A stretch of 64,000 nt of DNA, taken from contig NC_068990.1 of NCBI RefSeq assembly GCF_001194135.2, forward strand, positions 20,694,143 through 20,758,142, written 5' to 3'. A program made the translations under genes and the position numbers. Each line of letters starts with the position of its first letter. Position 1 is the stretch's first letter. The stretch is from Octopus bimaculoides. Taxonomy: Eukaryota. Shown here one piece after another: positions 1,139-21,977 of this stretch. Below the pieces are notes generated by a model. It had not been told where the DNA came from. It was given only the letters and a program-made list of their open reading frames with translations, and did not search any database.

Positions 1139-1199
1139 ATGTATAAATCTCTTGGCTTGATCATCCTTGCAGTGGTGGCCTGCTTCCATGCAGTACCCA
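1139..1199 (+). CDS. Protease 1 exon 1 (signal peptide)
   Basis: caccATG context; hydrophobic [20 protein letters not shown]; donor GTAAGT at 1200, conserved in paralogue 2; TATA box about 50 bp upstream. Confidence 0.9.
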
Positions 1200-4100
1200 G
1201 TAAGTAAGAAAACAAGCTGGCTTGTTTTGACACCTTTTCGATTTCGTTAATCATTCTATATGCATCTTATAGCATTATTGTTTTTAATGTAGAATTTTCT
1301 TGTATAATTTAATAACTTCAAATGTAAATGTTTAATTTTCTGTTCATATACAGTGGAGCTTCAGTTTTCGAATACCTCTCAATCACAGGAAAAATTGTTT
1401 ACGAATAATTTTTCGGACATAAAGCGTCTCGGATGAGGAATCCTGTCTTGAATAACGAAGACGCAAACTGCCAACAACGGTTGAAAATAAACAGAACGTC
1501 TGTTGCTTTCTGGCTTTCCCTCTGTGGACATACCTTTTCAAATGAATCCACTAGGCCTTCAATTGAAATTCCTATGCAAAAATAATTTCGCTTTACAGAA
1601 ATTTCGAGTGACAGACGGCCTTCACGGGCGAAGTAGATTTATAAATCGATTTGCAAAGTATTTTCATTAAATTCATTACCATTTTCAATCTTTTATGACG
1701 CATATCGAGATTAGATTTGCTTTCGCGAGTATATAATTTGAACTCAAAAAGGAAAATGGTGCGATAGGTAACAAAAATATGTTTGGATTCTTGCTTCCAT
1801 GGCATACAGAGTAAACGTATTTTGAATTTGCTTAATTACTTCTGTAGTTTTTTGAAAATAATATAAGGTGGAGATACGGTCACAATTTCCATTAACGTTG
1901 CCTCTTTATCATAATCAAAATGGCGTATATGAAACTCAAATATTTGACTGCTATTTATTTTCATGACACAAGATCAACTATAACGTAGAATCTAAAACAA
2001 AATATCGGAGTTAATTTAATACTTCTAGACGTTATCTGACATATGTTATCAAAGTATTATAGACGTTTAACTCTTAAGCATCGAGGAAGATATGAAGAAA
2101 GGTCTAAATATTCCATCATTGGCACTTTCATAGACATATTTCTTTTCAAAATTTCTTAAACGGATATGAATGAGTGATTTGTTCAGGCCTTGCTACTACA
2201 ATGCTAATGCGATCCAATATACGTGTGTGCGGTGACAAAAATGAGATATTTTCTTGTTTTCAGTTAAGGATGTAGACGAACATATTGTGGGTGGAAGTGA
2301 CAGTCGACATTGTGAGTTTCCTCATATGGTATACCTCGATATTGCCCTGGGTGATGGAGGAACATTCTGTGGTGCATCTTTGATTGGCAAGAAACATGTC
2401 TTGACAGCAGCCCATTGTCTGTAAGTATGTTTGATTGTTTTGGTCATTGGGTTCTACCGTTCTTGGGCTCAGTTTTGAAGGATATAATTCCGCACCCGTC
2501 TCCCCCTTCGAAGAAAAAGTCATACCCAGTTATCATATTCTTTAAATCTCTTATTCTATCGAACTTTCTTTGCCGGAGCACTAAGGTGCGGAGACGTAAA
2601 CAAAGCAACAACAGTTGTCAAATAGCGGCGGTCGTGGGAAAAACAGAGGTACAAAGGTACACGTATGTCTATGTATGTGCATGTGTGTGTGTGTATGTGT
2701 GTATCAGACTTCTACACAGTTTCTCTCTACCATGTACTCTCACAATGCATTGTGCGATCTGGAGTTGCTTCAGAGACTACGTGACGAAGATGCCGCGAAA
2801 TGGAACTGAAAAGCCAGCTTCTTAATCACACAGCAATGCCTGCGACTATATTTTGTGTTTATATTCCCACGGAAAATTTGATCGATTTAGATTTAAATCT
2901 ATTGTTGCTGTGGTTGTGGTGGTTGTGGTGGTGGTAATGATAGCAGTAGTTGCATGCATTTTGCCTCGTATCAGCGCTAGTCAAGCTGACTTATGATCAG
3001 AAGTGTTGTAATCATGATAACCCTGTTTGGTTGGAGATGTGGGAATCTGTAATCCCATGTATATATACTGCCATATTTCAAAATATGTTTGAATGAAATA
3101 TGTACCTGCTAGCAGCTCAAACTGCTAAATCGAAAGCTTCTACTACATCGTTTGACCTCCCAGACGTGGCAGTCAAATCTCTTTGAAATCAAATCCTACG
3201 ATTTTTAATTTCAAAACATTCAAATTTTAGTGATAAACAAACATAATGAAATGCAAAATACAGATTTATAATATTGATTTCGAAATTCGGCACAAGGCCA
3301 GCAATTTCAGGAAAGAGGTAAGGGTCGATTACATCTACCCCTTAGTTCAAATGGTACTTATTTTCTCCATACCGAAAGGATGTAAGGCAAATCGAACTCG
3401 GCAGAATTTGAACACAAAACAGCCGGTTTGCCGCCTTAAGTTTAGTAAGATATCGACTTTGGCACAAGGCTAGCAATTTCGAGGCAGTGGTAAGTCGATT
3501 ACAAAGACCACAGTGCTTAACTGATATTTAGTTTATCAACCTCGATAAGATGAAAGGCAAAGTAGAATTCGGCGTAAATAGAACTCTGACCGTAATGACG
3601 GATGAAACGGCGCTAAGCAACGTGACCGTCGTGCTAACGATCCTGTCAGCTCGCTGCCTTCAAGTTTAGTAAGACATCGATTTCAAATTTTGGCTCAGCG
3701 TCAGTAATTTCGGGTGAAGTTGGTAAGTCGATTATATTTATTTTATAAACCCCGAAACGATGAAAGACAATGTTGGTATCAACGAAATTCGTACTCCGAC
3801 CGCAAAGACGGACGAAATGTCGTTAAGCCTTTTGCCCGGCGTGCTCACCGGTCTGTCAGCTCACTGACTTAAGGTTTATGTTATGTCTGAAGCTACTGCT
3901 ATCTAGCACTTTCGGACGATATCTACTCAACGGCTAGTCAACAGTTACTGAACAATCAGTCTACTGTCAGTCGACTCCTACTACGGTCAGACTACCTCTA
4001 TTTATATGTCTTGGTCGAGCCTACTTCTTCGCTTGGGGCGTCAACACAACAGTTTAATAAAATATCATAAATCACTATGCGAAAACGAAGCGCCAGCTGG

Positions 4101-21400: not shown

Positions 21401-21977
21401 TCTCTTACTCTCTCTTTATCTATTTCTCTGTTTGTCTGTCTCTCTGTCTGTCTGTCTGTCTCTCTCTTGCACATTCTCTAAATATATTCACCATTTTATA
21501 TGAATTAAGCTGTATAAATATTTATTTCATTGATAAATTTTTTAACAGTTAATTTCTAATGCTTGAATCCTAAGTAGATAAACTTATATGTAATAGCCTG
21601 CACATATTGTTCTTCTTTTTTAAAACAAAACCACTTTTAGGTGTGTGTGGTCGGGAACGACTGTTTCACAAGTTTTGTTTAACACAATATTTATATGTTA
21701 TTATCAATAACCTTATCTACTTTCGAATCAATTGTTTGAAAATAAATTATTTCACGTTCTATCGAAATGTGTCAATTATTATGACGTAAAAAAATATTCA
21801 AAAATGTTTATTTCACAGGGAGATTCTGGCGGTGGTCTTCTCTGCACGACGACCGTTGACTACAAATATGTCGTTGCTGGCGTTGCCTCTTATGGTTATG
21901 ATTGTGATGAAGGATTCGCTGTCTTCACAAACACCGCCAATTACAGAGATTTCATTGATGAGAATATTACAGAGTAA
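15373..21977 (+). CDS. Secreted chymotrypsin-like serine protease (peptidase S1A), paralogue 2; 6 exons, 259 aa
   Basis: Exons 15373-15433, 16348-16504, 18955-19079, 20142-20273, 20391-20536 and 21819-21977 have the same phases as paralogue 1 and join into a 780-nt ORF: [27 protein letters not shown]|[232 protein letters not shown]. Confidence 0.95.
16348..16504 (+). CDS. Protease 2 exon 2
   Basis: tttttag acceptor; [10 protein letters not shown]...ICGGTLI...LTAAHC; GTAAGT donor. Confidence 0.96.
17410..18018 (-). mobile_element. Three tandem SINE family A units in intron 2 of protease 2
   Basis: Homologous to 3270-3878. Confidence 0.8.
18955..19079 (+). CDS. Protease 2 exon 3
   Basis: tttttctccag acceptor; [16 protein letters not shown]...HRDY...; GTTAGT donor. 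Confidence 0.9.
19870..19964 (+). mobile_element. 3' remnant of the (AAT)n-tailed retroposon in protease 2 intron 3
   Basis: ccccagtgtcactttgat...ctctctcactc followed by a long (AAT)n to about 20053. Confidence 0.8.
20142..20273 (+). CDS. Protease 2 exon 4
   Basis: ttttgcag acceptor; DNDIAVLEL...[10 protein letters not shown]; GTATGT donor. Confidence 0.96.
20391..20536 (+). CDS. Protease 2 exon 5
   Basis: tacctag acceptor; ...NDKC...HICVG...NICY; GTAATA donor. Confidence 0.95.
21819..21977 (+). CDS. Protease 2 exon 6
   Basis: ttcacag acceptor; GDSGGGLLC...GVASYG...AVFTNT; TAA at 21975-21977. Confidence 0.96.
   Translation, partial: GDSGGGLLCTTTVDYKYVVAGVASYGYDCDEGFAVFTNTANYRDFIDENITE

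What the first reader, a model, noticed from the sequence alone, without database searches (positions are those of the whole stretch)
1139..21977. Tandem secreted protease pair diverging at protein level as fast as or faster than at silent sites (toxin-like evolution)
Seen (hand count, exons 2, 4, 5 and 6): 61 codons differ in amino acid versus 13 that differ only synonymously, roughly 73 non-synonymous to 18 synonymous nucleotide changes. That implies pN/pS of about 1.1-1.3. Both ORFs are intact, and all 10 mature-chain Cys, the catalytic triad and the splice phases are conserved. The signal exon differs at only 5/61 nt, versus 23-24 differences in each of exons 2, 4 and 5. Overall protein identity is about two-thirds. 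Established: S1 serine proteases are a diversified component of coleoid posterior salivary (venom) gland secretions, and a conserved signal peptide with a hypervariable mature region is typical of toxin gene families. Inference: these are venom or salivary proteases under diversifying selection.
Basis: partly seen in the sequence, partly recalled or inferred. Interest (0 to 1): 0.72.

Follow-up and report, generated by a model that had tools for sequence, protein, structure and literature searches.

The report
Fast-evolving octopus salivary protease paralogue
Two neighbouring, intact trypsin-like protease genes of the octopus Octopus bimaculoides differ in protein sequence as fast as at silent sites, and nearly all of the excess lies in one copy, which kept its fold and catalytic residues while about a quarter of its positions appear to have changed under positive selection.

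Summary
The window is Octopus bimaculoides. Gene A (1139-7953) encodes XP_014769409.1 and gene B (15373-21977) encodes XP_014769408.1. Each has six exons with canonical splice sites, and no assembly gap touches an exon.

In exons 2, 4, 5 and 6, 61 codons differ in amino acid and 13 only synonymously (73.7 non-synonymous against 17.3 synonymous changes, pN/pS 1.19). Over the whole coding sequence omega is 1.2-1.4, which is not significantly above 1 (p=0.25). Exons diverge about as much as introns (16% against 17%).

The excess is asymmetric. Gene B's branch has omega 1.3-1.5 against a background of 0.45-0.54 (p about 0.001). A branch-site test is significant for B (p about 0.005) and not for A, Z or Abdopus. 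Site models favour a class with omega 3-4 (p about 6e-4).

Neutral decay is unlikely. Simulated neutral sequences keep the open frame, ten cysteines and catalytic triad in only 0.1-0.6% of runs.

The conserved signal exon is weak evidence, because the non-coding 5' flank is equally conserved. The closest relatives are salivary-gland cDNAs, but expression was not testable here.

Verdict: a real, moderately interesting new member of a known kind. The codon tests use my own code on 7-8 sequences.

The parts
1139..7953 (+). Gene A, an S1A serine protease of 258 aa, identical to XP_014769409.1. Exons 1139-1199, 2264-2420, 5288-5412, 6338-6469, 6591-6736, 7798-7953.
   Evidence: It is the only AG/GT exon model whose translation equals P0008. 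Pfam PF00089 matches at E=1.6e-49.
15373..21977 (+). Gene B, the fast-evolving S1A serine protease paralogue of 259 aa, identical to XP_014769408.1. Exons 15373-15433, 16348-16504, 18955-19079, 20142-20273, 20391-20536, 21819-21977.
   Evidence: It is the only exon model whose translation equals P0001. Pfam PF00089 matches at E=4.5e-48. The AF2 model has pLDDT 91.2. Branch omega is 1.3-1.5 and the branch-site LRT gives 7.2-8.0.
1087..1094 (+). TATAAATA box 52 nt upstream of gene A's ATG. It overlaps an upstream in-frame ATG at 1093.
   Evidence: Read from the sequence. The same arrangement occurs in B.
15321..15328 (+). TATAAATA box 52 nt upstream of gene B's ATG. It overlaps the upstream ATG (15328) that the 274-aa RefSeq model XP_014769408.2 uses as its start.
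   Evidence: That the upstream ATG lies outside the mRNA is inference.
137..878 (+). Conserved 5' flank of gene A, 6.9% divergent from B's flank at 14113-14860.
   Evidence: 51/742 differences against the intron rate of 0.172 gives p=1e-16.
14113..14860 (+). Conserved 5' flank of gene B, the counterpart of 137-878.
6470..6590 (+). Intron 4 of gene A, unusually conserved.
   Evidence: It shows 5/111 differences from B's intron 4, against 16-17% in the flanking exons (p=8e-4) and 17% in the other introns (p=5e-5). Mean column identity is 91% across five genes of two species.
20274..20390 (+). Intron 4 of gene B, the counterpart of 6470-6590.
4817..5034 (.). Assembly gap inside intron 2 of gene A. 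It does not touch coding sequence.
   Evidence: Its flanks are collinear with B 18558-18697 and 18715-18954. The same gap is present in GCA_001194135.2.
14896..15008 (.). Assembly gap in microsatellite sequence 365 nt upstream of gene B's ATG.

Best explanation
Genes A and B are two members of a three-gene tandem cluster (Z, A, B) of secreted chymotrypsin-fold (S1A) serine proteases on O. bimaculoides chromosome CM046610.1. [quoted passage not shown]

The whole clade evolves under weak constraint (omega about 0.5-0.7). Gene B arose by duplication inside the Octopus lineage, after the split from Abdopus and at or before the bimaculoides/vulgaris split. It then went through a burst of amino-acid change, about 50 replacements. 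Roughly a quarter of its codons fit omega of about 4. The scaffold stayed under purifying selection: ten cysteines, the catalytic triad, the oxyanion and S1 wall motifs, the splice sites and the TATA box.

The most likely mechanism is specialisation of a redundant secreted protease after duplication. Substitutions that could change substrate or inhibitor recognition include G226A at the back of the S1 pocket, position 99 (F in A, V in B, I in Z) and F217Y, together with many surface changes.

Shown here: the gene structures, the counts, the asymmetry, the rejection of neutral decay, and the LRT results. Inferred: that the excess is adaptive rather than relaxed constraint, that specificity changed, and that the genes act in saliva or venom.
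For: - Exact gene models and an intact pair.
- Pairwise omega of 1.2-1.4, with exon divergence (16%) about equal to intron divergence (17.2%, K2P 0.197 over 3454 nt).
- Branch model: omega for B is 1.48 against 0.54 (p=0.0017, 7 sequences) and 1.32 against 0.455 (p=7e-4, 8 sequences).
- Branch-site model A with B as foreground: 2dlnL 8.0 on tree T1, 7.9 on T3 and 7.16 with 8 sequences, with 25-28% of sites at omega 4.2-4.4.
- Controls as foreground: A 1.23, Z 0.02, Abdopus 0.02.
- 68 data sets simulated under the null gave a maximum of 4.66.
- Site models: M1a-M2a 14.5-14.8, M7-M8 14.9-15.3, M8a-M8 14.7. They remain p=0.01-0.02 without B.
- Relative rate: dN from B to the others (0.17-0.20) exceeds dN from Abdopus to the others (0.10-0.14), although Abdopus is about twice as far at silent sites (dS 0.33-0.47 against 0.15-0.25).
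- Neutral simulations keep the ORF, 10 Cys and triad in 0.6% of runs (71 substitutions) or 0.1% (96 substitutions). Introns carry 1-2 indels per 100 bp, while the coding sequence has only whole-codon indels.
- B has a confident S1A fold.
- Relatives from salivary-gland cDNA, and serine proteases make up 17-20% of gland-specific expression in this species (PMC7656900).
Against: - Omega above 1 is not significant for the pair (p=0.25), for B's branch as a whole (p=0.18 and 0.36), or by counting (58.2 N against 12.8 S, p=0.27).
- The codon-model tests come from my own implementation, not codeml. They use only 7-8 sequences from 4 species, two of which are nearly identical.
- The family shows mosaic history or gene conversion. 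Tree T3 is only 2 lnL units worse than T1, and signal-peptide residues are shared within species. This can inflate site-model LRTs.
- The highest-posterior branch-site codons are mostly codons with two or three changes. This class is known to inflate branch-site tests, although 12 such codons is about what rate heterogeneity predicts.
- Synonymous divergence on B's branch (0.075) is below the intron-based estimate (about 0.12). Measured against introns, dN/d(neutral) is about 0.85.
- There is no enrichment of B's changes in active-site loops.
- There are no expression, proteomic or activity data for either gene.
Confidence: 0.55

Rival explanations
1. Relaxed constraint only. B is a redundant but still functional copy. 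Its non-core positions drift at the neutral rate (omega approaching 1) and no change was driven by selection. The omega>1 class is a statistical artefact of few sequences, multi-hit codons and gene conversion.
For: - Every whole-gene or whole-branch test is compatible with omega = 1.
- Exon divergence equals intron divergence.
- The background omega of the family is already high at 0.45-0.7, with about 45-57% of sites in the omega=1 class.
- B's changes are not concentrated in substrate-binding loops.
- The top branch-site sites are multi-nucleotide codons.
Against: - The branch-site LRT rejects omega2=1 (2dlnL 7.2-8.0, chi-square p=0.005-0.008). It exceeds all 68 null simulations, holds on two topologies, and is specific to B among four foregrounds tested.
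- If about 40-50% of codons are frozen, as the site models say, an average omega of 1.3-1.5 on the branch needs omega above 1 in the remaining codons.
Confidence: 0.3
2. B is a young pseudogene or an unexpressed relic that has not yet been hit by a disabling mutation.
For: Omega is about 1. No B orthologue is annotated in O. vulgaris or O. sinensis. No expression data were available here.
Against: - With the observed amount of change, neutral simulations keep an open frame, all 10 Cys and the triad in only 0.1-0.6% of runs.
- All ten splice sites, the start codon and the TATA box are intact.
- Introns of the pair carry 1-2 indels per 100 bp, yet the coding sequence has only whole-codon indels.
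- The predicted fold is confident.
Confidence: 0.04
3. The genes evolve fast, but they are not venom or salivary components. They would act in the digestive gland or elsewhere, so the toxin framing is wrong even if selection is real.
For: - No expression evidence for A or B was obtainable here.
- Whitelaw et al. report that some orthologous serine proteases are expressed non-specifically in Hapalochlaena (PMC7656900).
- The function of cephalopod venom-gland serine proteases is untested (same paper).
Against: - The closest non-Octopus relatives, at 70-85% identity with the same signal peptide, come from posterior salivary gland cDNA and transcriptome libraries (B6Z1X0, B6Z1X2, R4FI10).
- Serine proteases dominate gland-specific expression in O. 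bimaculoides.
Confidence: 0.12
4. An artefact of assembly gaps, wrong exon calls or misalignment.
For: There are four gaps within the finding's span. The mafft protein alignment places two compensating one-codon indels in exon 3.
Against: - No gap overlaps an exon, and the gap flanks are collinear between the two copies.
- The translations equal the RefSeq proteins exactly.
- Exons 1-5 have identical lengths.
- Omega is 1.19 even without exon 3.
Confidence: 0.01

Closest known systems
Cephalopod posterior-salivary-gland 'S1 type peptidases' (Fry et al. 2009: O. kaurna B6Z1X0, H. maculosa B6Z1X2; Ruder et al. 2013: Abdopus SP1-Abd-1, R4FI10)
   Same: - Same clade, with 67-85% protein identity.
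- Same [15 protein letters not shown] signal peptide, a pro-segment ending in EH, and an IVGG-type N-terminus.
- GDSGGG instead of GDSGGP.
- The same ten-cysteine pattern.
   Different: The published family-wide estimate is omega 0.29 with one positively selected site (S1 Table of PMC4619613, citing Ruder 2013). This local cluster has omega 0.56-0.70, and B's branch has 1.3-1.5. B is the most divergent member: its dN to every relative is greater than that of the Abdopus sequence.
Vertebrate S1A proteases with solved structures (plasma kallikrein protease domain, anionic trypsin, granzyme B, cathepsin G, duodenase, chymase)
   Same: - Same fold: Foldseek target-normalised TM-score 0.83-0.90, sequence E of 3e-32 to plasma kallikrein.
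- H57/D102/S195 triad.
- Disulfides 42-58, 136-201, 168-182 and 191-220.
   Different: - Only about 30% identity.
- Residue 189 is Asn, not Asp, so the enzymes are not trypsin-like in S1. The RefSeq names 'plasma kallikrein' and 'anionic trypsin-2' describe similarity, not function.
- They lack the trypsin disulfides involving Cys128, Cys157 and Cys232, and have a Cys near position 119-120 instead.
Rapidly evolving venom or salivary serine-protease tandem arrays (snake-venom serine proteases, lizard, shrew and solenodon kallikreins)
   Same: Tandem duplicates of a secreted S1 protease, conserved scaffold and cysteines, and replacement rate at or above the silent rate in at least one copy. This comparison rests on general knowledge and on the summary in PMC4619613.
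   Different: - Here acceleration is confined to one of three copies.
- The whole-gene excess over neutrality is not significant.
- The changes are not demonstrably concentrated in substrate loops.
- Toxic or envenomation function is untested.

Membership tests
Peptidase family S1A (chymotrypsin fold) | Significant match to the trypsin domain profile over its full length | tested here: met
   PF00089 matches A at E=1.6e-49 and B at E=4.5e-48, covering profile positions 1-220 of 220.
Peptidase family S1A (chymotrypsin fold) | Catalytic triad His57, Asp102 and Ser195 in the TAAHC, DIA and GDSGG motifs | tested here: met
   Both genes have TAAHC, DNDIA and GDSGGG. Numbering was transferred from bovine trypsin, with all landmark residues checked.
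Peptidase family S1A (chymotrypsin fold) | Two-beta-barrel fold | tested here: met
   The AF2 model of B has pLDDT 91.2 and pTM 0.84. Foldseek against the PDB gives E of 1e-20 and target-normalised TM-score 0.83-0.90 to duodenase, granzyme B, cathepsin G and plasma kallikrein. A was not modelled.
Peptidase family S1A (chymotrypsin fold) | Secreted zymogen: signal peptide, short pro-segment and new N-terminus Ile16-Val-x-Gly | tested here: inconclusive
   There is a hydrophobic N-terminus [15 protein letters not shown], followed by ...EH|IVGG in A and ...EH|IVSG in B. No signal-peptide predictor was available. Cleavage after His is unusual and untested.
Peptidase family S1A (chymotrypsin fold) | Proteolytic activity | not testable with these tools
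   This needs recombinant enzyme and substrate profiling.
Cephalopod-specific posterior-salivary-gland (venom) serine protease clade | Groups with sequences cloned from posterior salivary glands, to the exclusion of other S1 proteases | tested here: met
   The top hits are B6Z1X0, B6Z1X2 and R4FI10 at 67-85% identity. The next clade is at 45-49%.
Cephalopod-specific posterior-salivary-gland (venom) serine protease clade | Expressed in the posterior salivary gland and present in saliva | not testable with these tools
   No RNA-seq or proteome tool was available, and no paper in the library names these accessions.
Toxin-type gene family under diversifying selection | A class of codons with omega significantly above 1 | tested here: met
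   M1a-M2a, M7-M8 and M8a-M8 give 2dlnL 14.5-15.3. The branch-site test for B gives 7.2-8.0. Caveats: my own implementation, 7-8 sequences, gene conversion and multi-hit codons.
Toxin-type gene family under diversifying selection | Whole-gene omega significantly above 1 | tested here: not met
   Pairwise LRT p=0.25. Omega for B's branch against 1 gives p=0.18 and 0.36. Fisher p=0.41.
Toxin-type gene family under diversifying selection | Signal peptide conserved by selection while the mature chain is hypervariable | tested here: inconclusive
   Exon 1 at 5/61 against the rest of the coding sequence gives p=0.10. It does not differ from the non-coding 5' flank (p=0.6). Three of its five changes are non-synonymous.
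Toxin-type gene family under diversifying selection | Variable sites concentrated on substrate-binding or surface loops | tested here: not met
   20 of 47 B-branch replacements fall in nine active-site loop regions that hold 83 of 232 residues (OR 1.43, p=0.31). Solvent exposure could not be computed because no coordinates are returned.

The most novel reading that the evidence does not exclude
Gene B would be a lineage-restricted, neofunctionalised venom-gland protease. Its S1 and S2 pockets were remodelled (G226A, F99V, F217Y) by an episode of positive selection. This would be a genomic example of episodic adaptive evolution in an 'ancient' venom lineage (coleoids) that published surveys describe as dominated by purifying selection (family omega 0.29). 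It would be paired with an unusually conserved intron 4 and 5' flank, which point to tight regulatory constraint on the same genes.
Probability: 0.35. Interest if true: 0.55.

Novelty: new member of a known kind. Interest (0 to 1): 0.42.

Why it matters
Published surveys place coleoid venom proteins, serine proteases included, under mainly negative selection (omega 0.29 with one selected site) and contrast them with snakes and cone snails. This locus shows that inside one tandem cluster a single paralogue can run at or above the neutral rate while its neighbours do not.

That gives a concrete, small system of three genes within about 52 kb for asking how a redundant secreted protease changes specificity after duplication. 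It would also let one test the proposed 'two-speed' model of venom evolution with enzymology and population data.

It is also a caution. The classic 'conserved signal, variable mature chain' pattern can come from regional 5' conservation or gene conversion rather than from toxin-type selection.

Tried and rejected
1. I looked for further protease copies in 22-64 kb of the window. tblastn found only the two genes. The rest is microsatellite and transposon-rich sequence with many gaps.

2. I tried to fill the gaps from the chromosome-scale assembly. It contains the same contigs and the same gaps.

3. I looked for a B orthologue in O. vulgaris and O. sinensis. None is in the protein database. The 10-kb flanks downstream of the gene-5 orthologues are collinear with window 7960-13005 and stop just short of the syntenic position, so this stays unresolved. 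My earlier reading that there is no third gene within 10 kb is therefore uninformative.

4. A protein neighbour-joining tree placed B basal to Abdopus, Hapalochlaena and O. kaurna. I rejected this as long-branch attraction, because dS from B to the others (0.15-0.25) is half of dS from Abdopus to the others.

5. I tested a recent A/B duplication (tree T2). It is rejected by 14.5 lnL units.

6. Enrichment of B's changes in active-site loops was not significant.

7. An Rfam scan for an RNA in the conserved intron 4 or elsewhere found nothing.

8. A literature search for the accessions and for reported selection on octopus salivary proteases found nothing specific to this locus. Ruder 2013 itself is not held in the library.

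9. The first parametric bootstrap run timed out. It was repeated single-threaded.

10. The supplement of PMC4619613 yielded only one additional nucleotide sequence of this clade, Abdopus GAGI01000007.1.

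
Full report
**What is there.** The window is Octopus bimaculoides. It is 100% identical to CM046610.1 of GCA_001194135.2 wherever both have sequence. Homology search with the visible ORF pieces returned two RefSeq proteins. 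I enumerated AG/GT boundaries until the translation matched them exactly, which gave one model per gene.
- Gene A: 1139-1199, 2264-2420, 5288-5412, 6338-6469, 6591-6736, 7798-7953. It encodes 258 aa, identical to XP_014769409.1, named 'plasma kallikrein'.
- Gene B: 15373-15433, 16348-16504, 18955-19079, 20142-20273, 20391-20536, 21819-21977. It encodes 259 aa, identical to XP_014769408.1, named 'anionic trypsin-2-like'.
- Exons 1-5 have the same lengths in both genes. All splice sites are canonical.
- tblastn finds no further copy in the window.

**Gaps (asked to be tested first).** None of the four gaps in the span overlaps an exon.
- 4817-5034 is in intron 2 of A. Sequence on both sides aligns collinearly to one short stretch of B (4660-4816 to 18558-18697; 5040-5287 to 18715-18954).
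- 8162-8435 lies 208 nt after A's stop codon, beyond three polyA-like signals.
- 9946-9955 is intergenic.
- 14896-15008 sits in microsatellite sequence 365 nt upstream of B's ATG. Its flanks are collinear with A.
- The chromosome-scale assembly carries the same gaps, so there is no independent fill.
- Both proteins are full length against 257-258 aa relatives, so no exon is missing.

**The observation.**
- In exons 2, 4, 5 and 6, 61 codons differ in amino acid and 13 only synonymously, with 91 nucleotide differences. That is 73.7 non-synonymous and 17.3 synonymous changes, pN/pS 1.19.
- Exon 1 differs at 5/61 positions. Exons 2, 4 and 5 differ at 24, 23 and 24 positions.
- Protein identity is 175/257, or 68%. 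Each protein has 10 mature-chain cysteines plus one in the signal peptide, and the triad is kept.
- Over the whole coding sequence omega is 1.24 (NG86), 1.41 (YN00) and 1.33 (ML).
- This is not significantly above 1 (LRT 2dlnL 1.3, p=0.25; Fisher p=0.41).

**Neutral yardstick.** The two genes sit in duplicated units that align along nearly their whole length.
- Aligned intron sequence (3454 nt) differs at 17.2% (K2P 0.197), with 1-2 gap openings per 100 bp. The coding sequence differs at 16.1%.
- So the protein-coding exons change about as fast as introns. Amino-acid replacement is running at roughly the neutral rate.

**Locus and history.**
- A third paralogue, Z (XP_014769410.1), lies upstream on the same strand.
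- O. vulgaris and O. sinensis have two annotated genes in the same order. These are P0007/P0123, the likely Z orthologues, and P0005/P0122, the A orthologues.
- Intron divergences are 9-14% for A against Ovu5, 10-14% for Z against Ovu7 and 9-15% for A against Z. For B against every other copy they are 14-21%.
- At silent sites B is 0.15-0.25 from the others. The Abdopus sequence is 0.33-0.47 from them.
- B therefore arose within the Octopus lineage after the split from Abdopus, at or before the bimaculoides/vulgaris split. It is not a recent copy of A, and tree T2 is rejected by 14.5 lnL units.
- No B-like protein is annotated in O. vulgaris or O. sinensis. The fetched flanks are collinear with the A-B spacer and end just before the syntenic position, so whether an orthologue exists there is open.

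**Which copy is fast?** B is.
- dN from B to any relative is 0.17-0.20. Among the others it is 0.08-0.14.
- B has more replacements than the Abdopus sequence has, although Abdopus is twice as distant at silent sites.
- Parsimony assigns 58.2 non-synonymous and 12.8 synonymous changes (50 amino-acid replacements) to B's branch, pN/pS 1.29.

**Codon models.** These use my own GY94/F3x4 implementation. Its pairwise estimate matches Biopython's ML value (1.33 against 1.32).

| Test | 7 sequences | 8 sequences (Abdopus coding sequence added from the supplement of PMC4619613; translation identical to R4FI10) |
|---|---|---|
| M0 omega | 0.70 | 0.56 |
| Branch model, omega B against background | 1.48 against 0.54, p=0.0017 | 1.32 against 0.455, p=7e-4 |
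| Omega B against 1 | p=0.18 | p=0.36 |
| M1a-M2a 2dlnL | 14.8 | 14.5 |
| M7-M8 2dlnL | 14.9 | 15.3 |
| M8a-M8 2dlnL | 14.7 | 14.7 |
| Sites in the positively selected class | 13.6% at omega 3.2 | 6.5% at omega 3.9 |
| Branch-site A, B as foreground, 2dlnL | 8.0 on T1, 7.9 on T3 | 7.16 |

- The branch-site fit puts 25-28% of sites at omega 4.2-4.4 on B's branch.
- The same test with A, Z or Abdopus as foreground gives 1.23, 0.02 and 0.02.
- Sixty-eight data sets simulated under the branch-site null gave a maximum statistic of 4.66. About half were zero, as theory predicts.
- Without B the site-model signal is weaker (p=0.01-0.02) and its parameters are unstable.

**Caveats.**
- There are few sequences, and O. 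sinensis and O. vulgaris are nearly identical.
- There is evidence of mosaic history. The 'concerted' tree T3 is only 2 lnL units worse than the orthology tree. Signal-peptide residues FHAVPIK are shared by A and Z, and CYAVPMK by all four vulgaris and sinensis genes. Recombination inflates site-model LRTs.
- The highest-posterior branch-site codons are mostly two- or three-hit codons. Multi-nucleotide changes are a known source of false positives, although 12 such codons is about what 71 changes over roughly 150 variable codons would give.
- Synonymous divergence on B's branch (0.075) is lower than an intron-based estimate (about 0.12).

**Not a decaying gene.**
- I applied 71 or 96 random substitutions to the inferred ancestor. 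An open frame, all ten cysteines and the triad survived in 0.6% and 0.1% of 20,000 runs respectively.
- All splice sites, the start codon and a TATAAATA box 52 nt upstream are also intact.
- The coding sequence has only whole-codon indels, whereas introns carry 1-2 indels per 100 bp.
- About 40-50% of codons are estimated to be frozen. A branch average of 1.3-1.5 therefore implies omega above 1 in the remaining codons.

**The protein.**
- Both proteins match Pfam Trypsin over the full profile.
- B models confidently, with pLDDT 91.2. It superposes on duodenase, granzyme B, cathepsin G, plasma kallikrein and elastase, with Foldseek target-normalised TM-scores of 0.83-0.90.
- The best sequence match in the PDB is the plasma kallikrein protease domain (E 3e-32).
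- In chymotrypsin numbering (landmarks verified), residue 189 is Asn in all copies, so they are not trypsin-like. Residue 216 is Gly and 190 is Ile.
- Residue 192 is Tyr in A and B, and Asn in Z.
- Position 99 is F in A, V in B and I in Z.
- Only B has G226A, F217Y and G18S.
- Replacements on B's branch are spread over the molecule. Twenty of 47 fall in nine loop regions around the cleft, which hold 83 of 232 residues (OR 1.43, p=0.31). Solvent exposure could not be computed.

**Signal exon.**
- Exon 1 at 5/61 does not differ significantly from the rest of the coding sequence (p=0.10).
- It equals the adjoining non-coding flank: 6.9% over 742 nt, which is itself far below the intron rate (p=1e-16).
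- Three of its five changes are replacements.
- The 5' flank is also conserved between species.
- The low divergence is therefore a regional property of the 5' end, from promoter constraint and/or gene conversion. It is not evidence of toxin-type evolution.

**Venom or salivary assignment.**
- The nearest relatives outside the genus are the 'S1 type peptidases' and 'SP1' sequences from posterior-salivary-gland libraries.
- Serine proteases make up 17-20% of gland-specific expression in O. bimaculoides (PMC7656900).
- This is good circumstantial support. No expression, proteomic or activity evidence for A or B could be obtained here, and the function of these enzymes is untested in the literature I could read.

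**Comparison with what is known.**
- The family, its expansion and the genes themselves are known and annotated.
- The published family-wide estimate is omega 0.29 with one selected site (S1 Table of PMC4619613). Coleoid venom is cited there as an example of purifying selection.
- I found no report of this cluster or of a paralogue with omega of 1 or more.
- The result is a new, local example of a familiar pattern, asymmetric acceleration of one tandem duplicate of a secreted protease. It is not a new kind of system.

**Verdict.** The best explanation is post-duplication specialisation of B with positive selection on a subset of sites (confidence 0.55). The main rival is relaxed constraint without adaptation (0.30). 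Interest is moderate.

Noticed in passing
window 6470-6590 and 20274-20390 (intron 4 of A and B); L002 17280-17391, L003 20149-20265, L004 14828-14944: The short intron 4 (112-121 nt) is much more conserved than the exons on either side and than the other introns. A against B shows 5/111 differences, compared with 16-17% in exons 4 and 5 and 17% in the other introns. Mean column identity is 91% across five genes of two species. There is no Rfam match. It could hold splicing or regulatory signals.
   Followed up: partly
window 1087-1094 and 1093-1138; 15321-15328 and 15328-15372: A TATAAATA box lies 52 nt upstream of the conserved MYKS start codon in both genes. It overlaps an upstream in-frame ATG. 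The current RefSeq model of B (XP_014769408.2, 274 aa) and the O. sinensis models start at that upstream ATG. The transcription start is probably downstream of it, so the 15-residue N-terminal extension is likely an annotation artefact.
   Followed up: partly
window 11335-12300, minus strand: A degenerate mariner/Mos1-type transposase lies in the A-B spacer. It is split into at least two ORFs: HTH_48 (E 6e-16) at 11845-12300 and Transposase_1 (E 2e-21) at 11335-11793. Part of this region (10940-11464) is also alignable in the O. vulgaris and O. sinensis spacers.
   Followed up: partly
L002 10001-18972 (chromosome CM046610.1, about 19 kb upstream of the window start): A third tandem paralogue, Z (XP_014769410.1), lies upstream and makes this a three-gene cluster. 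Z has the lowest branch omega of the three (0.19-0.32). Its 3' flank is 99% identical to A's (206 nt) and its exon 6 is only 4.5% divergent from A's. This suggests a recent gene-conversion tract at the 3' end.
   Followed up: partly
exon 1 of all copies (window 1139-1199, 15373-15433; L002-L006): Signal-peptide residues are species-specific rather than gene-specific. FHAVPIK occurs in O. bimaculoides A and Z, and CYAVPMK in all four O. vulgaris and O. sinensis genes. This pattern is expected from concerted evolution of the 5' ends of tandem paralogues.
   Followed up: partly
window 53621-54073, plus strand: A 150-aa ORF (…ILWDVMIQCDH…VIPIVIGALG…LLGTARIFRGVLEA) with no Pfam match. From memory it resembles a conserved C-terminal ORF of invertebrate retroelements. 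Nearby, 54422-54858 and 55025-55439 share 76-92% identity with pieces of intron 3 of A and of the A-B spacer (5849-6271, 8656-8820), so these are dispersed repeats.
   Followed up: no
window 22100-64000: No further protein-coding gene was recognised. The region is dominated by microsatellites (TG/CA, TA and TATG-type), homopolymer-like A/T-rich tracts and 15 assembly gaps.
   Followed up: no
proteins A, B, Z and relatives (chymotrypsin numbering): The clade lacks the trypsin disulfides 22-157 and 128-232. It keeps Cys22 and has an extra Cys near position 119-120, which suggests an unusual fifth disulfide. The residue before the mature N-terminus is His (…EH|IVGG), so zymogen activation is not by a trypsin-like cut.
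   Followed up: no
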